From NCBI RefSeq assembly GCF_963853765.1, contig NC_088862.1, forward strand, positions 3,658,001 to 3,722,000: DNA of 64,000 nt. The letters run 5' to 3'. This document shows positions 1,518 through 63,261 of this stretch, piece by piece. The first letter of the stretch is position 1. Every line of letters starts with the position of its first letter. The notes under the pieces were generated by a model. It made no database searches and was not told the DNA's origin. It saw only the letters and a program-made list of their open reading frames with translations. The position numbers were made by a program, and so were the translations under genes. The stretch comes from Magallana gigas. Its lineage: Eukaryota.

Positions 1518-4500
1518 CTGCTGACGACCTCTGCTATTTTGGAGTGTTCCTCTGAGGGACTTTTCAATGCTTTCCTTCTGGTTGAGATGTTGTAAAACAA
1601 ATCCTCTACCTTGTAACAGAGATTAAAACATTTGTAAAATAATGGTGTGAAGCTAATGTGAACATTTAAACCAGGGTTTAAATTTTGCATTTAAAATCAT
1701 ATATAGGGTATAAAAAATAAAAGAACTCCTCCATAACTTGACAATGCTACACGTAATGAATTGCAGGGTTCACATCAAATACACAAAATAATTTGATAAA
1801 GAGCACAACTTGCAAAAAATCATCAGATAAAAACTTCCTACAAATATGCACATTTTTCCGTTCGTAAAAACTGTTCATTACTAAAATTCCAACTTCAAAA
1901 GGGCCAAAATTCCCAGAAAAATATTGAAATTGGAATTTCCTGGTAATATGCACATCTACAGATTGTGTCCAAAATACTTACAAAGTTTTACAAAATTTTG
2001 TGCAGCAGTTTAAGAGAAGATGCACTTACCAAAAAAAATGAATGAAAGGTCAAATATGTTAAACCTGTTGCAACTTTGTTGCAAGATATATAAATATATA
2101 AAGGCACTTATGTTGCTCATCCAGTCATGGTATGTAATTTACATGAAGAGGAAACCTTACATGAGGGGAAAATCAAGGTGTAAACTATATATAAAGGGGA
2201 ACAAGGTGTAAACTTTACATGAAGGGAAACAAGGTGTAAACTATAAATGAAGGGGAACAAGGTGTAAACTTTACATGAAGGGAAACAAGGTGTAAACTAT
2301 AAATGAAGGGGAACAAGGTGTAAACTTTAAATGAAAAGGACATCACAATGTTAATTTTACATAAAGGGGAATCAAAGTGAAGTAAAGTCTTAACACAAAA
2401 TGAAGTTGTAGATTATGGGGAAATCAAGGTGTAAACTTTACACCAGGGAATCATGGTGTAATGGGAAATCAAATAAAGTTTTCAAACAACTATGCTATAA
2501 TAAGTGTTTTCAATACAAAGAGGTCATGCAACATGAAAAATTTATACATGAACTAGATATCTGTGAGCCAATGCTCACTAGTGATACCCCTGCTCTGATG
2601 TAAATATACAAAATATGCAAAGTTGTCATTTAACAGGAAGTTGACATCAGAGAGGCACAAAATGGATCTCACCTTATGGCTTGCCTAAACAAAGAGTGTG
2701 TTGAAATTTCATGCGCCAAGAAAAATATGAGTGATAGATATATGGTGGTGCTATATATACTACTGATGTCACATGATTTGAATCCTTTGAAGAGCGAGCC
2801 CGAGTATAATTAGTCAAGAATTATGCTATTGATACTCCGATATGCCGAAGGCTGTATGAAAAGAATGGATCTCACCATATGGCTTGCCTAAACAAAGAGT
2901 GTGTTGAAATTTCAAGCATCTGCAATCAACAGTTGCTGAGAAAAATTACACAGAAATTATGTTACAGACAGACACACAAGGGTAAAACAGTATATCCCTT
3001 CTCCTTCAAAGCAGGGGTAAAAAAACTAGGGCAAGCATACTGTAATTTGAGTTCCAACATTCCCTGCACATGGTTTTACTGGCTCTTTCACTTTACCATC
3101 CACATAACTTCCTCTGGAAAATACAATTAAAGCAAAATAAACAATTCAAACATGAAACAGACTATATATACTCTCATGAAAGTATAATTTACAAGTATAA
3201 TATTTTTCGAAAGTCGAACATCTCGAGGATTTCTATGTATTTTTAACAACCAAATCTTATTCTTATGCAAGGATATGTGTAAGGTAAAGAGAAATCATAT
3301 TTACTTAATAAACTGCATTAATCTCTATAGTATAACGTAGATAGTTTAAAAAGTCAATCATGTTTATGTTGAAAATACATAGAATATTGCCACAATGTAG
3401 CTGCTTATATAAAGAATTATTATACAAAGTATAGAATTGAAAGATAGACAATGACTTCAGTGACAAAAAAACTGACTTGAAAGCACATTTTGAATCAGTC
3501 GTTTTGGTTGTTATGGTGACATGTGCCACATGACTAATACTGGCCAATGCTTCGCCTCGAAATCCATATGTAGCGATAGAGTTCAAGTCCTCAAACTTCT
3601 GCAGTTTACTAGTGGTAAATCTTTCACAAACAATGTCCATATCTTCTTTCTGTAAATAAAATCATGGTGAAATAACCAAGAGGTGACAAACCAACAAGTG
3701 AACAACACATAACCAACCATGGAATGAAATACAATCTCTGTACAACAGAAACACATTTCAGCTTCTTTCATAAGAGATATCACAACAGTTCAACAAATTT
3801 GTAGTCAATGACCCCTAGTTAATGATTTCACTGTTAAAAGGCAATAGGTCATCAGTTGCAAGACCAATCCATTAGAAAACATCACTTTGAAGAGGAGAAT
3901 TCATTAAACTTTACAGAAGTAAAAAATAAATGCTGTCCTCTCTTAAAGGTAAAATAAGAAGAATACTAAAAGAGAACTATCAAGACAAATACAACAGAGC
4001 AGATGATCATCAATAACAAAAAAAATAAAATATTTCTCATAATTTTGTTACTAATTTTAGTTTCATTTGGCCTTATCAATGTTTATTTTTAGAATCACTT
4101 GACCTGATAACTGTGGGTATTTTTAGCATCACTTGACCGGTTATTGTGTCTATTTAAAGTAACACTCACCCTGATCCCTGTGCCGTTATCCTGAATCTGT
4201 AGCAGTTTCAGGCCACCTTGTTTGACAGTGACCTGAATGTTAGAGGACTTGGCATCCAAACTATTAACATAAAATTGTATGTTATATCTTATTACCTTAA
4301 GGTACTTGATATGTATTATAAACCTTATAACAAACTTTTAAAGTGGGTTTCTCTTTAAATATTACGACTCTAAAAAGGAGTCTTAACAAAGAATTCCTTG
4401 GATGGTGCCACAGAGAGTTTGGCATTTAGTAATCAAAAAGAAAAACCAAACTGAGAGGCCTGCAGCACAATCGCTCACAAGCACTTGCCAAAACTGGTTT

Positions 4501-4901: not shown

Positions 4902-5188
4902 GACACTTTTTTGTTAGGCTTTTACCTGCCTGTAAAGAGCATTATGTAATTACGTGGCATTTGTAATCACAGTAAATTGCAAACAACATTTGAGAAATCT
5001 TTAACCATGTTAATGACATTAGTTACATTTAGAACTTTCAAAATTTTTCATTTTTAAGCCATTTCAATGCAAAACAGCAGTTTTTAAAAGCCTGAGTGAT
5101 ACAATCACATATTATGATTTAAGTATTAAAAATATTGCAAAACACTCCTTATAATATGGTAAGACAAAAGAAAAACTAATCTAAAAAG

Positions 5189-5639
5189 AGAACAAGAGAT
5201 ATTTGGGAAACATAAATGCCTCCATTCCTTAGAGACATCTGAGAAGAATAAGAACAGAAACTGCAAATAATTTTTCAGTCATAACTCTGTCGAAAATTGC
5301 TCGATCATACCCCAAATAAAACTTAACCTAGATATCATGAAGATAAATCTGTATACCAAATTTCATATCAGTAAGTGCAACCTCTGCAAAGAAATTGAAC
5401 GGAAACCGCAAATAATTAGAATTTTTTACTTTGTACAAGGGGCACAACTCTGTCAAAATTGCTCAATTGTACCCGATATCAAACTTGACCTATAAATTAT
5501 TATGATAAATCTGTAAACCAAATTTCATTTCAATCAATATGTGCAACCTCTGCGAAGAAAATGAACGAAAACTGTTGATAGTCTGACAGATAGACAGCAG
5601 CAAAGCAATATGCCCTCCCTTCTTCAAAGAGGAGCATTA
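5189..5639. mobile_element. HINE-like element with two internal repeat units of about 165 bp
   Basis: Starts AACAAGAGATATTTGGGAAACATAAATGCC. Contains two related units (AACTCTGTC.AAAATTGCTC ... GATAAATCTGTA.ACCAAATTTCAT ... GTGCAACCTCTGC.AAGAAA.TGAACG). Ends CAGACAGCAGCAAAGCAATATGCCCTCCCTTCTTCAAAGAGGAGCAT. Confidence 0.55.
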
Positions 5640-6195: not shown

Positions 6196-6699
6196 TAGGT
6201 GTCTACAGGTAACAGTTGGTATCCCTGTACGCATGGTAAGGACCTTGGTATTCTCCTGAGTGTGAATGAGAAAGTCTTCAAAATTCCCCCCCCCCCCCCC
6301 CAAATTTCGGCACTCCTGAGATAATAATTCAATGATGACTCTTTTCTATAGAAGGGGGATAATGTGGCAGAGTCAGGTACCTAGCATCCTTACAACCTTT
6401 GCCTACTGCCAGTAGTGGGTTAATTAACCCTTTAGTTCGATTGGTAGAGTACTGGATTTAGTGGATTTGTATACCAAATGACCTAGATTTAATCCCCTGC
6501 AGAGGAATCTTCTGGTTTCGGTGCTCACACTAAACTAAACTATACATGTACATACCACTAAATTTATCCTATACAAATATGTATATGATCTTGGAACTGT
6601 CACTTCTAATGCTATAATCGTCCACTGACATGAGTAGTGCAGTGTAGACAGATATAATTCTCCGTTTTATTTTAACAAAGTCGAAACAAAACTTAATAA

Positions 6700-7168: not shown

Positions 7169-10100
7169 ATGCCTTCGGTGACTGCTCTAAGCCGGACCAT
7201 ATCGGGTCCTATAGGGCTACACGAGGGCTCTAAAGAATTGCCACTTGTGGAAACTATGCAACTGGTAGAGCCCCGAAGAGAGAAGACTGTACCTAATCAC
7301 CTTCTTGAAACAAGTAATTAGGTTTTCCACATAAAATGAATTGAACTTACAATTTTTTGAAGTTTATTTTATTGATAACTAAACTGTCAAAATACCAAAC
7401 AACAACAATGCTCATTTTATTATACACTCAGTGTTGCAAAAATTAAGCATGTGTACAGTTTGTTTTAATCTATCATATAAGATAGGGTTAGCACACAAAT
7501 TGGTTTTTTTTTTAGGTATATAAGATGAGACCCAAGCTCAGGTCTTTAGATACATAATCATCGTGTTGCGCTTATCAGATAAAATGTTACAAAGTGAAGT
7601 TATGTATCAAAAATATGATATGATATGAAATAAATTTTTTAAATCCCATTATTTTTTTTTCAGAAATATACTCCAAAGTTTCTCAAAATGCCATGGTCCT
7701 GGCTAAACCTGCAATCATACACTTTGGAGGTTTTGAGGTGGATAAGAAACATGTACAATCCTTGCAGATTGTCAATGCCTCCACCGAAGTTATTAATATG
7801 CATATCATTCCCCCACAAACGAAGTACTTCTATATCAAATACAAGAAAATGGTAAGAGTCATACATTAAATTTCTATGTTCAGCAATTCCAAGACACTAG
7901 TCTGAAGGGGGGGGGGATATTACTCAATTTATTTTCTGTATAGTTTACATTGTTTCCCTTACATATCAAATTTGTGCAGATTGAAGTTGGTACAATTTTT
8001 GTCAAAGATTTGACAATTTGTGCATCTTTTGAATATATATTATCAAGTCAGAGATATTTAACAACTTTGAATGTTTTTCAAAATGTGTTTTTAACATCTT
8101 AACATCTGTTCTTTTTCCTATTCAGGAGCGCTTGGTGCCCGGGCTAACCATTGATTGTACGATAGAGTTTAGTCCCGATGAGTGGAGATATTACTATGAT
8201 AGTATTAGAATCAACTGTCCAGTAAGTATCAATATAACTTAGACCAATTTATTTTCTTGAGTTATAACTCTCGTATCTCAAGATCCAGGTGTTTCGTGGC
8301 TATGCATCTTTAATGTAATATTCAGACATCTGAAATCTTAAAAAAAAATTATTCCTTTGTGTTCACCTTGAAGACCTTATCCAGGAAAAAGAAGGGAACA
8401 TAGCTTTAGATTTGAATGCGATATTTCACTCCTGGGTATTATTTTTCAGGGGGAGGAGAATCTGGTGATTCCGATTCATGCCTACCCTGTGATGAGTACC
8501 AAGGACTTCCCCACACAGTTCAGTTTCCCGCCGGTGCCTGTGGGACACAAGTAAGTTTTCCTTTATCTCCACTCCCTAGGGGGATCCTACCACATATCAA
8601 AACAATTATCAACAATAGGATCTCGATCTTGATCTCTCTCTCAGTCTCTATATATATATATTAATTTTTCTGTCTTCCCTCTTTATATCCAATGTTTTCT
8701 TACTGTTTTCCTCAAATTTTATTTTTTTTTATCTCTGCTACTGGATTACATTCTTGTTTTTTCACCTTCTTTATAATCAAGCTAAATAAAATGGTGAAAC
8801 TTGATTTATTACTTAATCTTATAAGTACTTCAAATTTATTTACAAGTGTCACTATTCTGTCTGATTTCATGGTGATTATTTTTTTTCTAGAATGACACAG
8901 TTATTCCCCTTGAGGTGTGAGGGACCAGTTGATTTTGAGTACCAGCTTATCTATGTACAACCCCACCCTTCTTTTACAGTGCACCCAATGAATGGTAAGC
9001 CAAATAATTGACACATGTAATTTAAAAAAATTTGATGGAATTTTTTATATTCATTGCTAATAAAATCAGCTTTCAAATAGTCAAAATACTATCAAATAAA
9101 ACACACACACAACTCTCCTTCAACTTTATTTTATTTAGTTACAAGTGCAAGTATAGTCAGGAATCTTACAGCTCAATCAATCCTATTTTTTTTCTGTACA
9201 TTTGATTAAACTATACTTGTTTTGACAGGAATCATTCCGGCTCACGGACAAACGGAGGTCTCTGTAACGTTTGCTCCTCTGGAGTTCCAGACAGCTCTCA
9301 TGAAGATCCAGCTGACCATTTCTCAGTTTAACTCTCAGCCCATTGTGTGCACATTTACAGGAGTCTCTACCCCTGGGCTGCTGAAGTAAGTCACAAAATT
9401 GGATAGAAAATTATAAACTTTTTCAATTGAAGGGATTCAAATATTTCTACAGAACAGTACATTCTTTTTTTTTTTTTTTTTTTTGGTAAGAAATCATCCA
9501 CTTTGAGAATTGCTTTGAATACTATTCCCAATACAGTTGAACTTCGATATCTCGAACACCGATATCTCGAATACAATGGATATGTCGAAGTCGATATGGA
9601 TAGGTCGAAGTCCCAACCACCTATTTTTCAAGTAATTTACCCTCGAATACTCGGATATCTCGAAGTTTTTCAACAGCCCCCTCTAGTTCGAGATAACAAA
9701 GTTTGACTGTATTTGACTTTTTCACTTTTCCTTCTTTCTTTGACTATTATTTGTAACAAATTATTAATGCCTGTATGTATGATGTGGTTTGTAGAGATAT
9801 CTCCATGCAGAATCAGGAAATTGATGACAACGTCCTTGACCCCCGCTGTCTTTCTCCGCTAGACAGGTCACGGGAGAAGAGGAAGCTGGCCTTCAAGATC
9901 AAACCCAAAGCTACAAAGCAGCAAACTCCACAGGTATAGAAGGAGCACATTATTGGAGAATCATTTAGCTTTTGTAAAGCATAGTGAAAATATTATCTAT
10001 ATCATTTATGTATTCCTGAATGACACTGATACATGCCCTTGTGTTTTGAAATTATATGTAAAAAGTGCGATTTATTTTTTATTCTCTTATAAGTGCAATT

Positions 10101-23120: not shown

Positions 23121-25849
23121 AATAACAACTTGAAACAGTGATCACGTGCTCACCCTCAAGATATCAGTTTTAGTCTAATGTTTATATTCTTTACCATGGC
23201 CATAGTTCGGTTTGTACAGAACAACGTACTTCTGACTTTTCGCCTGTTTTACATTTTAGCCTTTTCGATTTACGTCAAACTAGACAATTATTATTTTATC
23301 TGAAGACCGTGTGATGAAGATTGGCCTAATTAAAAAACAAAAACAAAGGGTATTTATATATCAAAGAGGAAAAAGATTGATGAAGCACAAACCAAACTTC
23401 CATTTTTGTTGCGTACCTTGTCCAGTTTCTTCATTGCCGTATCCGGGCATCTTTTCTTCTGTATCCATGGAGGAGTTTTTCTTTCTTACATTTGTTAAAA
23501 TTCATAATTCTGGACATATTCTAACTTATATTGACAAAAATAGTCATGTATGAATGGATACCAAGTTTGTTTTAGCGAACAGTTATCCCTATAAGCCATA
23601 TTCTTTTCTATTTCCATACCTATATACACGTGAAAACATCTTGAAAGAAGTTGAATGCACCCTTGTCTAAACCACCCAACCAATGAACTCCACAGGGCTC
23701 AGAGATTGTAAAAAAAAAGTTACAAATGTGCTTACCAGCTGGATCGAGAAACACGAAACTACCAATGTAGTTCACTCACAGTAGTTCACCAATTCAGTCA
23801 GGCTACCAGTTTCCTAGTATATGTGCTTCTAAGGCAAAAGTTATGAACAAATGCATTGGTACAATTTTGAACATCACTCCTCGTCGAGGTCTGGCCCGGG
23901 ACTGCACGAGTTCACTATACTTCGCGACTGGCCAAACTGGTTTACTAAATATAGTTTTAATTGCTGACTAACACTCATACTTACGGAACAACGCACTGGC
24001 CAGAATTATAACTTCAAAACTTGAAACCCAACAAAATAATCTCGATAGTACTATATTGCTAATTACCAAATATTTTTTGTCATTACATAAGATATTAATT
24101 TTTGGGAAAGATCTTCAAAACTTTAGTGCATTCTGCGTAATTTCTTTTAAAGCATTCAGCGTATTATCGACCATATTTGATAAGTCACACAACAAAAAGG
24201 TTCCGGGCCCGCTTGACCCCCCCCCCCCCCCCGTGAATCGTAAACTGTTGGCTAGCGAAGATGGTGAAACTAAAATTCATTTCCTTATATTTTTTTTGGT
24301 GAAAGAAATCTATATCTGTCACATAAATATATGTTTTGTTAAGTATGTTCACTCCCAACTTGGTTTCCTCGGCACAAAAATGGCTTTATAGAAGAACCCC
24401 ATCCCTCCTCAAAAACTGACGTAAAAGTCCCTAGATAATTCAAAACGACACTATTATTTATAGAATAGTATGCCTTATATATATATTATTCTGGCTTTCG
24501 TTTGAGTTACATGTATATCATCATTCTATTTATATCTCAAATCAATATATACATGCACCTAAAAATATAACCAAAGCTAAAACTTTATAATATATATCTA
24601 TATAACTATAATATACCGGTAATAGTGGTATTTGATCAAACATAATGTCAAACTAGTATATAAAGCTTCAACATTTTCCATGTTTCCAAAAGCACGTGCT
24701 TGACCGACGAAAACCCGGTTTATATAGAAACATGATTTTTGTTTTACTGCACACCCTTGTGTAAACCTTCTGTATCTTAAGGTGTCCCCTAAAGCTTCAC
24801 GGGCTTTGACCTTCTTACATCCTTACTGACCGGGATACTAGCTAGTATCCCGATCTAATAGGTATTGTGTGATCCGGGTGTGACGAAGAGATCAACTGAT
24901 GCATATCCTGTCTCTTATTAAGCTGTTTTTGGTTGTAAATTGTTTGTTTGTGTGTTTGTTTTGAGGGGTTGGAGGGAGGGGGTAATAATTTGTGCATTTT
25001 CTTTACATAGAAATGAGAAGCTTTGAATAAAAACTGTAGTGACAAAAAGGGGGGTGTTCATTACCTATAGTTATATTAATTAAGGTATTGTCCAATATTT
25101 CCTGAAAGACACGGATTAAACCCTGTTGGTTCCCTGTATGCCGGACTACAGTGCATGTTTACACGGGTTCATTATCCCTGTTCAGATAGCCGTGAACAAT
25201 GTATATATACACGGTCCCTCGGGTTTAAATATGGACAAGAAATCAATGTGTATATATCTACGTATATCTGCATTGCCAACACACCGACACTCCACCTTCT
25301 TTCGAAATCGGGTGAGTTAATTGAATTACCAAGAAGATTCAATACAATTAATTTTAAAATTAAATTCAATAATATCTCGAAATCGCAGTAATTTTTGTTG
25401 GCTCAACCTGCATTGTGATGTTTTATTTTGCTGAGTTTGCAGAACATTTATATAATGGTATTTTTCGTGACCCCTGCCTATTAGCTCAGAGATTTTCTGA
25501 GTGCAGTTGAATTTATCGATCTAGATTTGGAGTCTCGTCGGTTTTCTTGGTATTCACTTTCGACCAGTGCATTACATGCACGCGGTCGTCTCTGACTGCG
25601 GATCAATGGTGTATTGTGGAGTAGATATCTATGTTTTGGTCTCCGTCCTCAATCAATGATGTATTGAATATCTTTGTAGATATAACTGTAAGACTGGCAT
25701 CGACTCATCTTTTATACATGGAGTGCGGGCAGGTGAAGCACCGGCAGTCAGCTGTATTGATCCATTACTGAGTGGAAAAGGACCGAGAGTATCGAAATAA
25801 TCCCTCAGATATCCTCGGGAATTTAGCTTCATCCCAACATTCTCCAACA

Positions 25850-56300: not shown

Positions 56301-57580
56301 ATATTTATTCCCTAGAGTTGTGTACAGAATGGAAGCAGGAACTTGTATGAACTGCATCCACAAAAGGAATTAACTTGATGTGAAAGTTGTCTATTTTTAG
56401 AAATAAAAATATATTCATTTTCATAATCAAGTCGTTTATCTCTATTTTATTACTTAATGCAAGATTTTTTTTTTAAAAATTTAAAAAAAGAAAAAATTGA
56501 ATGATAGTTGAATACTACTGACTGCAGAGTGCATAGCAGGAGTCTTTGTCAGTTTTAATGAGCAGTTCATGACTCGGGAGTTTTAACCAACCTTTTTCTC
56601 CTGTAGGATCAGAGCAACATAGACATACAGCTAGGCGTGACGTCGGTCGGGCTGGTGGTCTTTCAGAATAATGTCAAAATCAATACATTCCCATGGTGAG
56701 TAATAGCAGTGTGTTTGAAGAGAATTCTCGCATTTAAATATTAAAAGTTGTGTACATTAAAGAAAGGGGTTTTAATTTCTCTTTATAAGAAGTTAATAAA
56801 TAAGACCCCAAAAAGCCATTAAATCAAGTAAATTTTGTATTATATAAGATAAAACATTTCCTAATGATTTTTTTTTCAGATGTTATTTAAAACAACCTTA
56901 ATTTTGCCAAAATTTTTCAGGGCAAAGATTGTCAAGATATCATTTAAAAGAAAACAGTTTTTCATTCAACTTCGAAGGGAGATGGTAAGTTGACACTAAT
57001 TTGAATGATTTGACAACTTGTCAAAAATGCATAGAATTTCACATAGTATATTTTTTCATATTAACAATTCAAACCTATCTTGTACATAAAAATAAAAGTT
57101 TGACCTTACTGTGATGTTCTTTATTATTTTGATTTGGTCACAGAAATGTTTGCTTTTATGACCAACACGCCTTGACATCAAAGAATCTTGGAGATAACAT
57201 TTAGTCAATGAAACTTTTTGAAGCAATGTAGATTTGTATGGTTACAGAATGACTCGGTGGAGAACCTGATCGGCTTCAACATGGTGAGCTACAGGTCGTG
57301 TAAGAATCTCTGGAAGTCCTGTGTGGAACATCACACGTTTTTCCGCCTCTACGTCCCGAACCCTCCGTCAAAGAAAATCTTCTCCATGGGATCCAAGTTC
57401 CGCTACAGGTGAGTGGGCGGCACAGACAGGTTAATCATATACCTGGCCAGGTGTTATATACCCAGGTGATGCTGTGTTGTGTGTATTAGCTGAGGAGTAG
57501 ACCATCAAGTGTAGAGGAACGATAGTTGTAACTGAGATGACAGGTATATTATTACTTATTAGGTTAGTTACTGACACACT

Positions 57581-57616
<36 letters not shown>

Positions 57617-57631
57617 TGAGGCGAAGCCGAA

Positions 57632-57667
<36 letters not shown>

Positions 57668-60600
57668 AGTGTGTCAGTAACTAACCTATTAAGTGTTTTG
57701 TTTTCCCAAGGACTATCTAGTGATACATTTACTGATTTTACTCCCAAGAAGTGTTGATCACACAATTAAATTCCACACATTTTTATTTTTTCAACAGTAA
57801 ATAAAGTTCAACAATCTTTATATCAGTAACAAACAGTTTTTCAACAATAAAATATTTTAAACATTTAATAATAAACAATTAAAACCACTCCAATCTCTGC
57901 ATTTTTTTCTGAACTATTTTGTGTTAACGTTGATGTTACCGATATTCACGGTGCAGTTACTGAAGCATATTGGTCTGAATGGTCGTTTCTCTTCAACTGG
58001 ACTCTGCGTTTCAAAATCTGCGAAAAGTTGATCAATTTGCCACCCATTAAGATCGCATTCCACTATTTGAGTTTCACAAACCGTTGATGAAGATGATGAA
58101 TTAGCCATAATAGCATGCCTCTTGGTACTTGGTAACATTGGCAAGCTGGATGTTGGTGCAAGATTTTCGCTGATAGACTCACCCATCTGAATTTTTTCTG
58201 CATCACTAACTCGCTGATAGACACTCAGACTCTGTACGGACTTGTGTCCAGTGACAGACATTACTTGTGAGGGTCCATACATACACTTGGACAGAATGGA
58301 TGCTCCAGTTGCTCTTATGGAATGGTTTGTATATACTTTTGACAAGTTAGTAGCCTTGCTCAAGGAGCTGAGAAAACTCCTCAATTTCTTTTCACCAACA
58401 GGGACATTACAGAACCACACTGCATCAGATTCGAGAAAACTCTCTTTTGGTCGCTGCCATAGCCTGTAAAAGGGAACATTTCTAACTCAAAACAAGATAC
58501 ACATAAATTTTCAGTCATAAAAATTTATATATTTTGTGTCAATCAAAATTACCTGTCACATTCTGGATGGAGCTTTGATAAGTACATCTCGAAGGACAAA
58601 ACTGGACAGTAGATTGATCCTACCAATAAAGATAACAAATACATATAAGTATTGATAGATTTTTAAATAAAAATTTATAAGTATGATAAGATTTTCTCTA
58701 TGACTCAATTCTTTTAAAAAATACAGTAGACACAGTGAAAAGCAAAACAAACCTTTAATTTCTGGCATAATTCCAGAAGAAGTTTCTTTGTCCAAACGAT
58801 GGTTTTTAGTTAATTCATCAACGACTTTTTTCACGACTTTTCGACCAGTGTCCTCGTCAGTTTCAACTCGGAACATATTTTTGGTCATGTTATGCATGTT
58901 TTCATTCCCCCGCCTGCAGAAAAACATTCGGATGTCAAACTGCACTTTATTGAAGAGACCCTGTGGTGTATTGATAGACAGATGCATACTTGTATACAGC
59001 GATTTCAAGTCGGTGTCTGAGATAATAGGATGGTGAACCACGTCTCCCTTCCCCATTCTTTTGGCTTCGGCTAAAACAGCCTTAAAACAAGTGTTGCTAT
59101 CGGTAAACGAGGAATCCTTCACTATATCCACTTTTCTGTTGAAGGGGGGTGACTTCAAATATCTGTTTATGCCATGGCGAATTGTCTCCAGGGAATTTAC
59201 TTTGTAATGTGACCCATCTTCTCTACGTAGATCCATGTAGAAATGGCCTAGCATCTCGTCTAATTTCACGTTGTCAAAGTCTTGAAAGTTCTCATTTTCG
59301 CCTTTTACTTTCAAGTATTCCTTAAAAACTTTAGCCGCTCCTTTGTTTACCTGTAAAGTTTTGCTACTGTTCAATTTTAATCGCTTTTCCTGTTTTTCCT
59401 CTGCAGTGCTTAGCACAAATCTGGATGCCATTCTACACGAACGCAGCAGACACAACAATATGTGACGTCAATTCAAAGGGCAACTACTCTAATTTTAAAA
59501 AAATTCCAAAGGGCAACAACTCAAAATATATTAAGAACTTACGGAACACGGTTTCTGTATCAAATAATATGAAATGTTGAGATGAGTAGGCGAAGCGGCG
59601 GCCAATGACGGCCATATTGCCTACTATTAATCCTCACGGAGCCTACATAGAGATATATGAGGCAATCACGTGCCATGTTTAAACCAATGAAAATGTGACA
59701 TTTCAGTCCGAGGGAAAACAATGTTATTTATAGGATTTTTGATTTTTAAGATACAAGTATTGTCAAAATATATTGCCTTTGAAAATTAATAAATCGCAAC
59801 CATTTAAATGCAACCTTTAAATGTTGATATTTCCGATTGTCAATTAAAAATTCCAAGATCATGCAGAACAATATGCTAAGGTATGATTGCAATAATAATC
59901 ACAAAAAAAAATATAAGTTTTGAAATGCAAGTAAGTACCCAGGTGAATATTAATTAAGGAAATAAATTCTTCTTGCTTATGTACCGGTAGTGTAAATTAC
60001 CCCAATAGGACAGAGATTTCCATTTTTACAGTATTATTGAACTGAAAAGAGTATTAAATGGAGAGCTAGAAAAAATTGTTTTGTAGAAATAAATGATTAG
60101 GATTAATAAAAGAAATTATTTTAGGAAATAATGTATAATTAAGTCATTCATATTAAATTTAGAAATATTTTGCATTCAGCGTAGTGTTGTCAGATAAGAG
60201 TTATTTTCCTTTACCCACAAAATATTCACATGCAGCATATTATGCATGTACATGGATCAACATCTATGGTTAGATTGTACTCCATTGATATGAGATATTC
60301 CAACCACACCTCATCACCAAATTGTTTGATTTTGTAGCGTTCATAATGCATGGTGTGTTCTGTCTCAAATTTTCTCAGCATTATCACGGTTTGTGGTTTT
60401 TTTCCCCCCCACTCTAACGATTGGTGACCAGAACCTTTCAGGAAAACCCCCACCCCCCTCCCTTTTGATCTCATTATTAACATGAACACATTCATTCACT
60501 CACAAGGGTTACATATGTCTCTTGAGTGAGCAATTTGTTTTGCCCATCATCCATTTTGTGTGACGGAGATATTTCTAATCGCACGTGAGCACAAATTTTC

Positions 60601-63261
60601 ACTTGTTCATCTTTTTATCAGTAATTTAAAGCATATTTTTAATCAGAGGGAGAGAAAGTGAAAGGAGAAAATCTTGGTTTCAGTTTAAATGAAATAAATA
60701 TCCACTCTCTCCATCAAACAAAACAACAATAATAAACAAATAAATAAAATGGTATGCATTTCTTTTACCATAAAAGATGCAGGGTTTTCTTGAGCTGACA
60801 GGTCAAAATGTCATTTCTAGAGCTAGTAGAGCTGACCATCTCTCCAGTTTCTCTGTCTTTTTCTGCAGATGCTAGTTGCTTTCTAAGTATCCAGGCATCA
60901 GAGTTGTTGTAGGAAATCCAGGAACCACCCCCCTTTCAATCAAATAGATGAACATCAGAATTTGTCACTCTAAAATTCCTAGAATAACTTAAAAATGCTA
61001 GGGAAAAACTTTGAAATTTTACTTTATTGTCCAAAAATTAGAAAAAAAAAGGCGACATAGGATTAAAAAAAAACCCTCACAAACACACAGTTTTAGATTA
61101 CGGTACATAAAATCATTTATATATGATTACAATATATATATCATAACATGGTATTACATTTGAAAAAATTCAAAAATGGGATAGAGAAAAGAAAAGGTTT
61201 ATTTTATATACAAGTAACATCTGGACTCCCACACATTCTGTATATTAAAGATGCCAAACTTATTCAAAGGACTGAAAAATATTCAACAAAACACAAAAAC
61301 ACTCATTTTTCACACAGATTTGACTCCAGAAGCAAATGTTATGGTGAATATTATAGAATTCACAAGCAGAAACTATTACAGACAATAGAATGTGTGGCAG
61401 ATGTACATAATAGTAACTATAGATCCATTTTACAGCAAATTTAATGCCATAAAACACACAACTTCACACTAAGTAGCATAAATTATTACAGACACAATAG
61501 AATGTATTGAGAATGTAATTACAGAAGCTCACATATTGGCAGTTGTCATAGAAAATACAACTATACCCTTGATAACAGAATAAAATTTAGAGTGATTGCA
61601 TAGAAAATACAACTACCGTACACATTCAATAGCAGAAACTATTACAGACAATAGACTTTACAGTGAATGTAATTACAGTACTTGCTATTGTAATTACAGC
61701 GGTAAAACAGAGTTCCAAACTTTGGAAGAAAACAAGAGGCGAGCTAAAATTGAGCGGACGTTCTCCAGGTGAGCTTTACCTTTCTGTGCCACAGAAGTCA
61801 ATCAAGTCTACGTGTTCTTGCATTAATTAATTAATTAAGTGGCGGTTCAGATTATTATAGGAAAATAATTGACTATGACATAAAAATCAGAATTTTTTTT
61901 TTTTACATAAGGGATTAATTAATCGATTTATGAATAAAAATCAGAAAAAAATTGTATGAAAAATGGAACTTTCAGCATTTTTGAAGCTGCATTTTAATGC
62001 GTATAATTTTTTGGTTATAACTAAGCTAGTAGTCTGCAATGTGATCAATCAGTTGGGGCCATGTTTACTGACATTTTTGCATGCTTGCCTCCCTTGACTT
62101 CATATTCCCTGATATCTTAGTTTACCCTGTTCCCTAGATAAAAATGGATGCCTGGGCTTTTACAGTAGTTACCTACAATCTTCCTGACACAGTCTCACTG
62201 CATTTTGACACTTCTTTTACACTAATTCTTGCACATATTTACTCAGAATAACATAGACTTGTAATCTTAAGGCTTCTTTGGGAGTTACAAATTCAGTTAT
62301 CTCCCTTTGGAGATCTGATTTCAGTTACCTCCCTTGATATTCTAAATCTAGTTAACTCCCTTGGGAGTTATACCTTTGTATATTCCCTGTGTTGTGTTTC
62401 TCATACTCTGTGTTCCATTCAAAAGATGATATGATGGATGGCATTTCATTATAAGAAAAAATTGTATTTAGAAAGTTTTACTTGTAGCAGCTGCACAATT
62501 GAGAATTTGTTTATTTGAGATCATGGGGATTTTGTATCTCTTCCTCTTAATTTTGTTAAATACACATTTTTTTTTTAGAAAAAAAAAAACATTACAGCTT
62601 TATAACAAATAAAAAAAAAATGAAGAGTAAAATATTAGTTAAAGTTTAATTTCCTGTTAAAAAGGGGAATTAAAACTTGTATTGTGTTGGGCATGAATTG
62701 GTTGTGTGTAATTAATGGCTAGAATCTGATGTAGAAATGATATGATACAACTAAAAAAATATCTATTCTATCAATTGAGAACTAAGATAATATTTTTAAA
62801 GCATTAATTTCAGCAAGGAATATTGGCATAGCATGAGCTTTTTACAAATTTTAATGTAGCCGGTGACTATGTATTGAAATGCTTGTTTTATAATTAAAAG
62901 AAACAAAATCAAAAGATAAACAATTAGCAGTGTTCTCAGCAAGGAGAATGAACATCAGAAGTGATCATTTTTGGTTTATTTTTAGGTCGCCCAGTAAAAA
63001 GTTTGCACGGCGGACGGTCAGTGGACACACGAGAGACCAAATCATCCAAGAACGCAACTTTATCGACGGCCATCGCAACCTTCCGAAGTCGCAGACGTTT
63101 GGAGGAACTCCGTCAACGGCTCGACCAAAGAGCAGTAACAGCGTTAACCATTCGTTCAACCGCTACGAGAGCATCAACAACCAGAAACGGGCCACGCTCC
63201 CCCACGACTACAAGGTCGGCTCAAACTCAAGGTCGTCCATACACTCCAGCAAGTCCGACGA
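50179..63261 (+). CDS. PTPN4: FERM-domain protein tyrosine phosphatase PTPN4/PTPN3 (PTP-MEG), 5' part; PDZ and PTP exons lie beyond the right edge
   Basis: Exons 50179-50322, 50703-50855, 51346-51388, 52021-52096, 52793-52890, 53210-53330, 53637-53724, 56607-56695, 56921-56984, 57248-57408, 61700-61768 and 62986-63261, all GT-AG and in frame. [97 protein letters not shown] and RSPSK match the PTPN4-type N-terminus, FERM and FA regions. Confidence 0.9.
50876..51202. mobile_element. Non-autonomous TTAA-TSD element in a PTPN4 intron
   Basis: TTAA|GGTGGCTCACTACACCT ... AGGTGAAGTGGGGTACC|TTAA. It contains a tRNA B-box-like GAGTTCAAATCC on the - strand at about 51054-51065. Confidence 0.65.
51508..51810 (+). 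mobile_element. Non-autonomous Crypton-like element, copy 2, with the right hairpin arm missing
   Basis: Colinear with 27505-27850 (ATAGTGCCTGTTTGGGAGGGTAACAGTTGAAATTGACACCCC ... AACCAATCAGATTTCAGTATTTAACATGAAAGTATAA). The sequence jumps from the loop (GACGCGAA, 51581) to the post-hairpin segment. TATAA occurs at both ends. Confidence 0.7.
52113..52336. mobile_element. TA-flanked MITE in a PTPN4 intron
   Basis: TATTGTAGATTCCTAATTTTACGCGAG pairs imperfectly with CTCGCGTTAAAAAAAGAATTAACAGTA. Confidence 0.5.
57556..59728 (-). mobile_element. Autonomous Crypton DNA transposon, about 2.2 kb, in PTPN4 intron 57409-61699, antisense to the host
   Basis: Recombinase gene bounded on one side by a perfect hairpin (57560-57688) and on the other by a CCAAT-containing segment ending near 59728. 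A short TTATT direct repeat occurs at 57556-57560 and 59724-59728. The right boundary is approximate. Confidence 0.75.
57914..59431 (-). CDS. Crypton-type tyrosine recombinase (DUF3504-like), 3 exons, 431 aa, intact
   Basis: Exons 59431-58753, 58619-58553 and 58463-57914 are joined by GT-AG introns into a 1296-nt frame. Tyrosine-recombinase catalytic motifs are in the expected order: FCRRGNE (R), TKNH (K), NHSIRATG (HxxR), VTGHKS (H) and SVYQR (Y). CPV...Y and LWQRP...W motifs are typical of Crypton/DUF3504 proteins. Confidence 0.9.
61360..61680. repeat. Degenerate low-copy repeat (AGAAACTATTACAGACAATAGA / CATAGAAAATACAACT) just upstream of PTPN4 exon 61700
   Basis: Motifs recur 2-3 times. 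Confidence 0.5.

What the first reader, a model, noticed from the sequence alone, without database searches (positions are those of the whole stretch)
57560..57688. Perfect 58-bp-arm terminal hairpin capped by GA-GGC-GAA-GCC-GA
Seen: the arms 57560-57617 and 57631-57688 are exact reverse complements. The 13-nt loop contains GGC-GAA-GCC flanked by GA/GA. Established: d(GCGAAGC) forms an exceptionally stable DNA mini-hairpin through a sheared G.A pair. From memory, the vertebrate Eulor5 repeats, which have been linked to Cryptons, have a similar GAGGCNNAGCCGAG apex; this needs checking. Inference: the cap is a structured single-strand or cruciform signal for recombinase loading or replication, so this Crypton has asymmetric ends rather than TIRs.
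Basis: partly seen in the sequence, partly recalled or inferred. Interest (0 to 1): 0.72.

Follow-up and report, generated by a model that had tools for sequence, protein, structure and literature searches.

The report
Hairpin end of an active oyster Crypton
The perfect 129-base hairpin is real and is the built-in end piece of a young, still polymorphic oyster jumping gene that encodes a cut-and-rejoin (tyrosine) recombinase, giving a concrete and testable picture of how this poorly understood transposon class marks its ends.

Summary
Observation confirmed: 57560-57617 and 57631-57688 are exact reverse complements around GA-GGC-GAA-GCC-GA. Oyster DNA contigs from two runs join 57549 directly to 59722, an empty allele. 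The mobile unit is therefore 57550-59721 (2,172 bp), with no target duplication (at most 1 bp shared). The hairpin starts 4-10 bp inside one end and moves together with a three-exon, transcribed, catalytically intact CryptonA/DUF3504-type tyrosine recombinase. Summed contig depth over both ends is thousands-fold above the flanks, from short derivatives that keep only the ends. A 17-nt inverted repeat (15/17) links the sequence 3 nt inside the hairpin to the opposite terminus. The same plan lies beside homologous recombinase genes in a pearl oyster, two mussels, a periwinkle and a brittle star. There the stems diverge but pairing is kept (36 of 67 pairs compensatory), and the GA-capped tip is always on the strand antisense to the gene. 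This layout matches Helitron2/Helentron ends, but the element has no RepHel gene. Best reading: a cis-acting, probably folded or extruded, recombination and/or priming site; the mechanism is inferred. The Eulor5 link could not be tested. This scan noted such hairpins before on other DNA of this genome, read once as Crypton ends (s1-403189) and once as Helentron tips (s1-359009).

The parts
57550..59721 (-). Whole mobile unit (2,172 bp): Crypton-type element, gene on the minus strand, inside an intron of a plus-strand FERM-domain host gene
   Evidence: Empty-site joint 57549->59722 ('skips 2172', 1 ambiguous base) in DNA contigs of runs X3 (side 132) and X11 (side 78), and in an RNA-library contig of X15. 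Loose ends with diverse AT-rich flanks at 57545-57547 and 59721/59722. Host exon 57248-57409 hits FERM_C at 3.9e-10.
57550..57553 (+). Terminal tail TATT (TATTA with the first stem base), outside the hairpin; conserved as TATTA(C/G)TTA in oyster, pearl oyster and both mussels
   Evidence: alignment A2.
57554..57694 (+). Extended hairpin (69-nt arms, 96%)
57560..57617 (+). Left arm of the perfect palindrome
57618..57630 (+). Cap GA-GGC-GAA-GCC-GA on the strand antisense to the gene; contains the d(GCGAAGC) mini-hairpin flanked by tandem G/A
   Evidence: PMC13037366.
57631..57688 (+). Right arm of the perfect palindrome. Nearly all other family copies have G instead of A at 57631.
   Evidence: table 3 (A>G, 8025 of 8029 depth).
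57698..57714 (+). Subterminal inverted repeat (IRa), 3 nt inside the hairpin
   Evidence: the repeat finder I2; script: 15/17 complementary to 59705-59721, the only hit.
59705..59721 (+). Terminal inverted repeat (IRb), ending exactly at the element boundary
57550..57716 (+). Hairpin-side end module kept by the abundant short derivatives
   Evidence: Summed contig depth 28,000-60,000 against about 14-18 in the flanks (X3). Joints 57716->59467, 57627->59699 and 57575->59667.
59467..59721 (-). Promoter-side end module kept by the short derivatives. It holds CCAAT boxes at 59602-59606 and 59684-59688 and a second GGCGAAGC at 59589-59596.
   Evidence: Depth 2,900-41,000.
58753..59431 (-). Recombinase exon 1 (ATG at 59431; N-terminal QRICH1-type domain, first catalytic Arg in [15 protein letters not shown])
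   Evidence: relatives.
58553..58619 (-). Recombinase exon 2 ([21 protein letters not shown])
   Evidence: alignment to homologues. Intron 58464-58552 is spliced out in RNA contig 13 of X15.
57914..58463 (-). Recombinase exon 3 with [10 protein letters not shown] (H-x-x-R) and [13 protein letters not shown] (H...Y); stop at 57914-57916
   Evidence: Pfam Phage_integrase 2.4e-6, above the curated cut-off.
57782..57787 (-). AATAAA poly(A) signal. The RNA contig ends near 57739, so the hairpin lies outside the mRNA.
   Evidence: table 8 (X15 record 12: 57739-58346).

Best explanation
The hairpin is the cis-acting end structure of a young, autonomous CryptonA-type (DUF3504 / tyrosine-recombinase) DNA transposon, 57550-59721. 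SHOWN: (a) the hairpin and the gene move as one 2,172-bp unit that is absent from other oysters at this locus; (b) the insertion has no target duplication; (c) the hairpin begins 4 nt from the end that lies downstream of the gene and is outside the mRNA; (d) a 17-nt inverted repeat joins the sequence 3 nt inside the hairpin to the opposite terminus; (e) very abundant short derivatives keep just the two ends; (f) the same plan, with a strand-specific GA / GC-ministem / GNA-GNNA / GA tip, accompanies homologous recombinase genes in three phyla, while the stem sequences diverge with compensatory changes. INFERRED: when the two ends are joined (circle or tandem junction) the sequence reads IRb-TATT-[hairpin]-GTT-IRa. 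If the palindrome folds out, as a cruciform or in a single strand, the two 17-nt arms are brought together around a 7-nt spacer. That is the geometry of a tyrosine-recombinase core site, with the observed crossover at the arm/spacer edge. I propose that the recombinase acts on this folded or extruded form, as integron integrase does on attC and XerCD on CTX-phage attP. A single-strand exchange completed by replication would explain the lack of a duplicated overlap. The SSB-resistant mini-hairpin tip may in addition nucleate folding or complementary-strand priming.
For: Boundaries and polymorphism: empty-site joint 57549->59722 in X3 and X11 DNA contigs and in an X15 contig. Unit character: depth about 4-8x the flanks over the coding part and thousands-fold over both ends. 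Deletion joints link 57716 to 59467. The short derivatives continue into the gene's 5' UTR (loose-end consensus at 59471). Gene: three exons with all YR motifs. Stranded poly(A) reads come only from the minus-strand sense, and intron 2 is spliced. There are 58 relatives with DUF3504 + Phage_integrase in bivalves, a gastropod and a brittle star. Inverted repeat. The same plan is seen in Amphiura (17/17) and Mytilus edulis (11/11), and more weakly (8-10 nt) in three further loci. Hairpin position: 225-530 bp after the true stop in the window, L002, L003, L006 and L007, and about 890 bp in L004. Structure conservation: 36 of 67 pairs carry compensatory double changes among four bivalve hairpins. 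Tandem GA flanks are present in 8 of 9 caps, with ministems GGC, CGC, GAGC, CGGC and GACCGC. The GA strand is antisense to the gene in all seven gene-linked cases. Joined ends exist as DNA: an X11 contig joins 59717+CAA to 57550 (table 5c). Mini-hairpin properties: PMC13037366. The searchable literature describes animal Cryptons as lacking terminal repeats and never mentions a hairpin.
Against: No biochemical or genetic evidence shows that the recombinase binds or cuts here. The folded-substrate step is analogy. The nearest-neighbour model gives both strands the same energy (-72.6 vs -72.3 kcal/mol), so the strand asymmetry rests on published mini-hairpin chemistry and on the conserved orientation, which shared ancestry could also produce. 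Only one insertion has an empty site, so target rules are n = 1. The terminal plan is the one described for Helitron2/Helentron elements, which are abundant in oysters, so mobilisation in trans by a RepHel protein is not excluded. One homologous locus (L005) has no downstream hairpin. In L001 the hairpin is 2.7 kb away. The inverted repeats in L003, L006 and L007 are only 8-10 nt and are not individually significant.
Confidence: 0.62

Rival explanations
1. The element is a Helitron2/Helentron-type (HLE2) non-autonomous shell that carries a captured Crypton recombinase gene. It is copied by rolling-circle transposition by a RepHel protein supplied in trans, and the hairpin is the 3' termination stem-loop.
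For: The terminal plan is the published HLE2 plan: a 5' inverted repeat 0-2 bp from the end, a 3' inverted repeat immediately upstream of a 3' hairpin, and no TSD (PMC3627910; PMC4067079; PMC11417382). Here this is seen. Oysters are full of Helentron-derived HINEs (PMC7492417). The empty site reads T|T. An earlier scan follow-up (s1-359009) read GA-capped hairpins of this genome as Helentron tips. Head-to-tail junctions (table 5c) are also typical of rolling-circle elements.
Against: The 2,172-bp unit has no RepHel; its only ORF is the recombinase. The gene + inverted repeat + hairpin plan, with fixed orientation and spacing and intact catalytic motifs, recurs in molluscs and an echinoderm. 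A passenger gene would not be conserved like that. The short derivatives retain the recombinase gene's promoter and 5' UTR. Published Helentron/HINE palindromes are short (5-10 bp stems in the mite; the whole right flank is about 60 bp in oyster Cg_HINE) against 58-75 bp here. With the hairpin placed 3', the flanks are A|A, not T|T. The flank bases at the conserved TATTA end differ among species (A, A, C, T, C).
Confidence: 0.14
2. The element is the recombinase's own transposon, but the hairpin is not the recombination site. It is a single-strand initiation signal, where complementary-strand synthesis or priming starts on a single-stranded intermediate, or a fold-back primer.
For: GCGAAGC / GCGNNAGC mini-hairpins sit at complementary-strand origins of ssDNA phages (G4, St-1, alpha3) and at ssiA, and they bind SSB poorly (PMC13037366). 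The cap is strand-specific and lies outside the mRNA. Loop variants seen here (GAA, GAAA, GCTA; GTTA in the third window hairpin at 30690-30846) are among the mini-hairpin loop classes (GNA, GNNA) that the review describes. The Littorina L006 loop TTTA is not.
Against: It does not explain why the crossover lies 4 nt from the hairpin base. It does not explain why an inverted repeat split between the two ends brackets the hairpin. No single-stranded intermediate has been shown for any Crypton. The role is not exclusive of the main explanation.
Confidence: 0.15
3. The palindrome works only as ordinary double-stranded DNA: a long symmetric binding platform for recombinase or host-protein multimers (an accessory/'arm' site). 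No folding is involved.
For: Compensatory changes keep a palindrome palindromic whether it is read as a duplex dyad or as a fold. Tyrosine recombinases commonly use accessory sites.
Against: A dyad-symmetric protein site needs no conserved non-complementary centre. Here tandem G/A mismatches, a GC ministem and GNA/GNNA loops are kept on one strand across unrelated stems. Stem sequence is almost free to vary (about 50% arm identity between distant families), which is unlike a sequence-specific duplex site.
Confidence: 0.07
4. The hairpin is an independent foldback/MITE insertion next to the gene, or an assembly artefact.
For: Long perfect palindromes are typical of young foldback elements and of some assembly errors. 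Two other long hairpins lie in the same 64-kb window.
Against: The empty allele removes hairpin and gene together, with no separate duplication around the hairpin. The hairpin is present in contigs of many independent runs and studies. Homologous hairpins occupy the same position in other species' assemblies.
Confidence: 0.02

Closest known systems
CryptonA / DUF3504-type Crypton DNA transposons (Goodwin 2003; Kojima & Jurka 2011, PMC3212892)
   Same: A single gene for a tyrosine recombinase with the full catalytic motif set and a QRICH1/DUF3504-type architecture. No reverse transcriptase or DDE transposase. Abundant non-autonomous deletion derivatives. Relatives are annotated KCTD1/KIAA1958-like.
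   Different: Published Cryptons are described as having 4-6 bp terminal direct repeats (fungi), or, in animals, no terminal repeats at all. Here the ends are defined to the base and show at most 1 bp of shared sequence, a 17-nt terminal/subterminal inverted repeat, and a 141-nt subterminal hairpin with a structured tip.
Helitron2 / Helentron (HLE2) terminal architecture (Bao & Jurka 2013, PMC3627910; Thomas 2014, PMC4067079; HELIANO 2024, PMC11417382; oyster Cg_HINE, PMC7492417)
   Same: A 5' inverted repeat at the very end. Its partner lies subterminally, immediately upstream of a 3' stem-loop. No target duplication. An AT/T-rich target. Huge non-autonomous families. Compensatory changes keep the pairings.
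   Different: The element encodes a tyrosine recombinase, not Rep/helicase. The stem is 58-75 bp instead of about 5-20 bp. The T|T context holds only on the opposite strand. The tip carries a conserved tandem-GA / mini-hairpin motif that those papers do not report.
Folded single-strand substrates of bacterial tyrosine recombinases: integron attC (IntI) and CTX-phage attP (XerCD) (my own knowledge: Bouvier 2005, MacDonald 2006, Val 2005)
   Same: A tyrosine recombinase, plus an imperfect palindrome in which structure, not sequence, is conserved and strand choice is set by unpaired features. The crossover lies at the base of the stem. There is no duplicated overlap.
   Different: The element is eukaryotic and intron-bearing, and the stems are much longer. 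Whether single-stranded or cruciform DNA is the substrate is untested.
d(GCGAAGC) / GCGNNAGC mini-hairpin DNA (Hirao; review PMC13037366)
   Same: The cap contains GCGAAGC exactly. Related caps use GAA, GAAA, GCTA and GTTA loops closed by G-C pairs.
   Different: Here the mini-hairpin is flanked on both sides by GA (a potential tandem sheared G.A) and crowns a long stem at a transposon end. One relative has a TTTA loop.

Membership tests
Crypton (CryptonA group) | Encodes a tyrosine recombinase with the catalytic R...K...H-x-x-R...H...Y set and no RT or DDE transposase | tested here: met
   [25 protein letters not shown] and [13 protein letters not shown] align with homologues. Pfam Phage_integrase scores 27.9 bits against a cut-off of 27.1. 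There is no other ORF in the unit.
Crypton (CryptonA group) | Protein clusters with animal DUF3504/KCTD1/KIAA1958-like Crypton recombinases | tested here: met
   58 hits down to 8e-114. Full-length hits carry PF12012 + PF00589 and are named KCTD1_15, KIAA1958-like or Tyr recombinase domain. No tree was built.
Crypton (CryptonA group) | Moves as a discrete unit (filled and empty sites) | tested here: met
   Joint 57549->59722 in two DNA runs and one RNA-library contig.
Crypton (CryptonA group) | Short (4-6 bp) terminal direct repeats as recombination substrate (fungal Cryptons); no TIRs | tested here: not met
   At most 1 bp (T) is shared at the junctions. A 17-nt terminal/subterminal inverted repeat is present. 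Kojima & Jurka found no terminal repeats in animal Cryptons, so this feature does not define the animal group.
Crypton (CryptonA group) | Circular excision intermediate | tested here: inconclusive
   One X11 DNA contig joins 59717+CAA to 57550 (table 5c). This could be a circle or a genomic tandem/solo junction.
Helitron2 / Helentron (HLE2) | Autonomous copies encode Rep/helicase (with or without an endonuclease) | tested here: not met
   The only ORF in the 2,172-bp unit is the recombinase. Whether a RepHel element with the same ends exists elsewhere in the genome could not be searched.
Helitron2 / Helentron (HLE2) | Asymmetric terminal inverted repeats: 5' repeat 0-4 nt from the end, 3' repeat just upstream of a 3' stem-loop | tested here: met
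   59705-59721 lies at the end. 57698-57714 lies 3 nt from the hairpin, which lies 4 nt from the other end.
Helitron2 / Helentron (HLE2) | Insertion between T and T in element orientation, without TSD | tested here: inconclusive
   There is no TSD and the site reads T|T on the window + strand. [quoted passage not shown] Flank bases in other species vary. n = 1 empty site.
Helitron2 / Helentron (HLE2) | Short 3' palindrome (about 5-20 bp stem) | tested here: not met
   Stems here are 58-75 bp, against 5-10 bp in mite HINEs and right flanks of about 60 bp in oyster Cg_HINE.
Folded-DNA tyrosine-recombinase sites (attC / CTX attP type) | Structure conserved, sequence free; strand-specific unpaired features | tested here: met
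   36/67 compensatory pairs.
Folded-DNA tyrosine-recombinase sites (attC / CTX attP type) | Recombination uses the single-stranded or extruded form, with one strand exchange | not testable with these tools
   Needs biochemistry or genetics. The lack of a duplicated overlap is compatible with it but is not proof.
Mini-hairpin DNA d(GCGAAGC) | Sequence GCGNAGC / GCGNNAGC | tested here: met
   GCGAAGC at 57621-57627; definition in PMC13037366.
Mini-hairpin DNA d(GCGAAGC) | Exceptional stability of the purine-rich strand compared with its complement | not testable with these tools
   The nearest-neighbour parameters give -10.2 vs -9.8 kcal/mol for the two strands. They do not model sheared G.A pairs.
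Eulor5/6 conserved vertebrate repeats (Crypton-derived) | A similar GA-stem-loop-stem-GA apex | not tested
   The text of PMC5753468 gives no sequence, and its figure is not held. I did not look up human repeat sequence.

The most novel reading that the evidence does not exclude
This Crypton lineage transposes through a folded (single-stranded or cruciform) DNA site. It would be a eukaryotic counterpart of integron attC and CTX-phage attP recombination. In this reading the joined ends form a split tyrosine-recombinase core whose two arms meet only when the hairpin is extruded. Because the terminal plan coincides with that of Helitron2/Helentron elements, part of the hairpin-ended 'HINE/MITE-like' repeats of bivalves would then be Crypton-driven rather than rolling-circle elements.
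Probability: 0.3. Interest if true: 0.85.

Novelty: new variant of a known kind. Interest (0 to 1): 0.68.

Why it matters
Cryptons are the only major class of eukaryotic DNA transposons for which neither the ends nor the reaction have been defined. The literature I could search says that animal Cryptons have no terminal repeats, and it never mentions a hairpin. This locus provides a base-exact filled/empty pair. It also provides an intact, expressed recombinase, its very abundant short derivatives, and a conserved structured end with a precise geometric relation to the crossover point. Together these give a minimal substrate: two end modules of about 170 and 255 bp. They also give clear mutants for an in-vitro or cell-based assay: the cap, the arms, and the 17-nt repeats. 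The result further warns that 'subterminal inverted repeat + 3' stem-loop + no TSD' is not diagnostic of Helentrons, which matters for repeat annotation in molluscs. Finally, it bears on the origin of the domesticated DUF3504 genes (ZMYM, QRICH1, KCTD1) and, if the Eulor5/6 link holds, on conserved vertebrate non-coding elements.

Tried and rejected
- An exact-product look-up of the exon-3 ORF found nothing. Two ENA relatives had no retrievable DNA.
- BLAST of the element against the rest of the window found no second copy. The other two hairpins in the window share only the cap plan.
- DNA nearest-neighbour folding cannot distinguish the two strands, so it gives no evidence on strand specificity.
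- Rfam gave only sub-threshold generic long-hairpin miRNA models (75 bits against a gathering score of 110). This is not a known RNA family.
- The first metagenome pattern scan, with the cap plus arm ends, gave 0 hits. The second, with a degenerate terminal motif, gave 48 hits, of which only L043 is a real related hairpin with a Pinctada-like subterminal repeat.
- Table S2 of the oyster HINE paper, which lists palindrome sequences, is illegible in the held copy. A direct sequence comparison with Cg_HINE tips was therefore impossible.
- The Eulor5 apex could not be checked.
- I considered a telomere-resolvase-like cut at the palindrome centre and rejected it. The centre is asymmetric, the element boundary lies at the base and not at the tip, and only one end has a palindrome.
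- I considered parvovirus-like hairpin transfer and rejected it. The cap has the same orientation relative to the gene in all seven gene-linked loci, so there is no flip/flop.
- I considered a TTATT crossover repeat (57549-57553 / 59724-59728) and rejected it, because the empty allele keeps the TG that such a crossover would delete.
- The similarity of the right flank (TGTTATTTATAGG) to the element's own end (TATTACTTATTAGG) is suggestive of pseudo-site targeting, but it rests on n = 1 in AT-rich DNA.
Exons and ORFs were searched by reference separately.


Full report
**1. Observation**

Positions 57560-57617 and 57631-57688 are exact reverse complements (58/58). The 13-nt centre is GA-GGC-GAA-GCC-GA. 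The palindrome continues imperfectly to 57554-57694: five more pairs beyond one T.T mismatch. As single-stranded DNA it folds at -72.6 kcal/mol, against -10.7 +/- 2.6 for shuffles (z = -23). Only five inverted repeats of this class exist in the 64 kb.

**2. The neighbouring gene**

A three-exon gene lies on the minus strand directly to the right:
- Exon 1 spans 59431-58753, exon 2 spans 58619-58553, and exon 3 spans 58463-57914.
- Exon 3 hits Pfam Phage_integrase above its curated cut-off, and exon 1 hits the QRICH1 domain.
- Aligned with six full-length relatives, the gene keeps all catalytic motifs: [25 protein letters not shown] and [13 protein letters not shown].
- The word search found 58 relatives in pearl oyster, mussels, a hard clam, a periwinkle and a brittle star. 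The full-length ones carry DUF3504 + Phage_integrase and are named KCTD1/KIAA1958-like.

This is a CryptonA-type recombinase. I searched exons and ORFs by reference and did not join them. The element sits in an intron of a plus-strand FERM-domain host gene (exon 57248-57409, FERM_C 3.9e-10).

**3. Boundaries, age and copy number**

Twenty runs from 11 studies hold the stretch or a part of it (the other four listed are unindexed raw-read RNA runs added by species label); the runs are labelled oyster metagenome or a coded organism. I laid two DNA contig sets, one RNA contig set and one raw poly(A) RNA run on 56600-60800.

- **Empty allele.** Single contigs in both DNA runs join 57549 directly to 59722 ('skips 2172', flanks of 132 and 78 nt, one ambiguous base). 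A contig from the RNA library does the same.
- **Mobile unit.** It is therefore 57550-59721. The insertion is absent from those animals, and nothing is duplicated: the site reads ...GGTATAT | TGTTATT..., with at most one shared T.
- **Hairpin position.** The extended hairpin starts 4 nt inside the boundary, and the perfect part starts 10 nt inside. This refutes an independent hairpin insertion with its own duplication.
- **Depth.** Summed contig depth is about 14-18 in the flanks (X3) and 50-130 over the coding part. It is 28,000-60,000 over 57446-57727 and 2,900-41,000 over 59420-59842. The tool warns that this is not a copy number. It does show several near-identical coding copies and a very large family that keeps only the two ends.
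- **Short derivatives.** Joints such as 57716->59467 show the internally deleted form. The loose-end consensus at 59471 shows that these derivatives run into the gene's 5' UTR.
- **Flanks of other copies.** They diverge at 57545-57547 and at 59721/59722 and are AT-rich.
- **Expression.** Stranded poly(A) reads over the coding part all have the first mate on the + strand, so the RNA is minus-sense. Intron 58464-58552 is spliced in an RNA contig. The RNA contig ends near 57739, after the AATAAA at 57782-57787, so the hairpin is outside the mRNA.
- **Joined ends.** One DNA contig of X11 joins 59717+CAA to 57550 (table 5c). This is a head-to-tail junction: either a circle, a tandem copy or a solo junction.

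**4. A second terminal feature**

The 17 nt at 57698-57714, 3 nt inside the hairpin, are the reverse complement (15/17) of the last 17 nt of the element, 59705-59721. Per position pair the chance of this is about 1e-7.

Joined ends would read IRb-TATT-[hairpin]-GTT-IRa. In a single strand, the two repeats extend the stem past a small internal loop that contains the junction. In a duplex with the palindrome extruded, they become two inverted 17-nt arms around a 7-nt spacer. The observed crossover then lies at the arm/spacer edge. This is the canonical geometry of a tyrosine-recombinase core site (11-13 bp arms, 6-8 bp spacer; PMC3212892).

**5. Other species**

I fetched seven loci chosen only by recombinase homology.

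| Locus | Species | Hairpin distance from the true stop | Notes (calls) |
|---|---|---|---|
| L002 | Mytilus edulis | about 320 bp | |
| L007 | M. galloprovincialis | about 530 bp | stop re-read from the ORFs; |
| L006 | Littorina | about 390 bp | |
| L003 | Littorina | about 420 bp | after discounting a nested insertion; |
| L004 | Amphiura | about 890 bp | |
| L001 | Pinctada | 2.7 kb | intervening DNA not analysed; |
| L005 | Mytilus edulis | none downstream | one oppositely oriented hairpin upstream; |

- **Cap orientation.** In all seven gene-linked cases (the window and six loci) the purine-rich cap lies on the strand antisense to the gene.
- **Cap sequences.** They are GA-GGC-GAA-GCC-GA (oyster, Pinctada, M. 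galloprovincialis), GA-GAGC-GAA-GCTC-GA, GA-GACCGC-GCTA-GCGGTC-GA, GA-CGGC-TTTA-GCCG-GA, GA-CGC-GAA-GCG-GA (window 27.5 kb), GA-GGAC-GAAA-GCCC-GA, and a degenerate one in Amphiura.
- **Arm divergence.** Arms of distant families are about 50% identical, which is background. The oyster arms are 76% identical to Pinctada and 58-64% to Mytilus.
- **Compensation.** Among the four bivalve hairpins, 36 of 67 pairs show compensatory double changes, with very few broken pairs.
- **Conserved end.** The end TATTA(C/G)TTA is conserved, and divergence starts exactly where the oyster boundary lies.
- **Bracketing repeat.** It recurs as 17/17 in Amphiura (6304-6320 vs 3647-3663) and 11/11 in M. edulis (12/12 if the last base after the hairpin is counted). 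In the three other loci it is 8-10 nt at the expected places, each weak alone.
- **Promoter side.** The promoter-side ends of oyster and mussel share CCAAT-box sequence.

**6. Comparison with what is known**

The searchable Crypton papers describe short direct repeats in fungi and 'no terminal repeats' in animals. None uses the words hairpin or palindrome for Crypton ends.

The layout matches Helitron2/Helentron elements: an inverted repeat at the 5' end, its partner just upstream of a 3' stem-loop, no TSD, and a T-rich target. This is a real rival reading: a Helentron-type shell carrying a captured recombinase. I rate it at about 0.14, for these reasons:
- The unit has no RepHel gene.
- The recombinase + ends plan is conserved, with intact catalytic motifs, across phyla.
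- The short derivatives retain the recombinase gene's promoter and 5' UTR.
- The stems are 58-75 bp rather than 5-20 bp.
- The T|T context holds only on the strand where the hairpin is 5'.

I could not search the oyster genome for a RepHel element with the same ends; that is the decisive missing test. Earlier notes of this scan disagree with each other on this point: s1-403189 reads such hairpins as Crypton ends, and s1-359009 reads them as Helentron tips.

**7. Mechanism**

- **Shown:** the hairpin is an integral, subterminal, non-transcribed, structurally conserved and strand-oriented part of a recently mobile recombinase-encoding unit.
- **Inferred:** the recombinase recognises the folded or extruded form of the joined ends and exchanges one strand at the stem base, and replication completes the event. 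The analogy is to IntI/attC and XerCD/CTX attP (my own knowledge). This fits the absent overlap duplication.
- **The tip:** it contains d(GCGAAGC), a mini-hairpin with Tm 76.5 C that resists SSB and marks complementary-strand origins of ssDNA phages (PMC13037366). It may nucleate folding, or it may serve priming on a single-stranded intermediate. The priming role is listed as a non-exclusive rival.
- **Limit:** the nearest-neighbour energy model cannot test strand asymmetry.

**8. Verdict**

I class this as a new variant of a known kind (Crypton), with ends built like those of Helentrons.

Noticed in passing
window 27484-27656: A second long hairpin with cap GA-CGC-GAA-GCG-GA on the + strand. 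Its stem continues outward through small internal loops to about 170 nt. This looks like a 'joined-ends' arrangement (outer stem = the two short repeats) and not a simple element end. No coding partner is nearby, and it has no sequence similarity to the 57.5-kb element apart from the cap plan.
   Followed up: partly
window 30690-30846: A third long hairpin (65-nt arms, 97%). Its 27-nt centre reads GA-ATAACGCGC-GTTA-GCGCGTTAT-GA(T). This is the same GA...GA plan, with a 9-bp ministem and the GCGTTAGC mini-hairpin sequence known from phage St-1/alpha3 origins.
   Followed up: no
window 59580-59625: A second GGCGAAGC lies inside the promoter-side end module. It shares AGATGnnnAGGCGAAGC with the hairpin's left arm/apex (3 matches in the window against 0.11 expected; the third, at 3549-3565, has two mismatches and looks unrelated). 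It also sits in a 20-nt imperfect inverted repeat around GGCCAATGACGGCC. Its meaning is unknown.
   Followed up: partly
window 59722-59734 vs 57550-57563: The host flank to the right of the insertion (TGTTATTTATAGG) resembles the element's own hairpin-side end (TATTACTTATTAGG). This is what insertion into a pseudo-site would look like, but it is a single case in AT-rich DNA.
   Followed up: partly
window 57631: Nearly all other family copies have G where this copy has A (8025 of 8029 summed depth in X3). The family consensus therefore reads ...GCCGAGCC..., as in Pinctada and M. galloprovincialis. Whether the partner base at 57617 co-varies was not shown.
   Followed up: no
window 58620-58752: The RNA contig that splices intron 2 runs unspliced through the predicted intron 1, which is open in frame in this copy. 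This could be partly spliced RNA, DNA in the library, or an optional intron.
   Followed up: no
L003 about 5150-5630 and 8720-9200: In Littorina the recombinase gene is interrupted near its C-terminus by a roughly 4-kb insertion bounded by long inverted repeats. The annotated protein (P0033) ends in read-through of that insertion. The true C-terminus (…FHNCTINNLNITITK) resumes at 9199-9561.
   Followed up: partly
L005 3663-3802: In a second Mytilus edulis locus the only long hairpin lies 200 bp upstream of the recombinase ATG, with its GA cap on the gene's sense strand, and there is no downstream hairpin within 4 kb. It probably belongs to an adjacent element. This locus is the one exception to the plan.
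   Followed up: no
L004 vs L002/L007: The subterminal repeat and hairpin base of a brittle-star element (…GGTATGATAAATTCGTTATTAGG) are strikingly similar to those of mussel elements (…GGTAAGATAAATTCGTTACATAG), although the hosts belong to different phyla. This suggests very strong constraint or horizontal transfer.
   Followed up: no
L043 (marine metagenome contig OBLZ010043814.1), minus strand from about 1969: A related hairpin with the TATTAC end, cap AA-GGC-GAA-GCC-GA, a partly deleted right arm, and a Pinctada-like subterminal repeat (TTATTTTCTCGAGGACC).
   Followed up: partly
window 25772-26848: An uninterrupted 358-aa ORF with a Haemolysin-III/PAQR-type domain (2e-40). It is probably a host gene or retrocopy, unrelated to the finding.
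   Followed up: no
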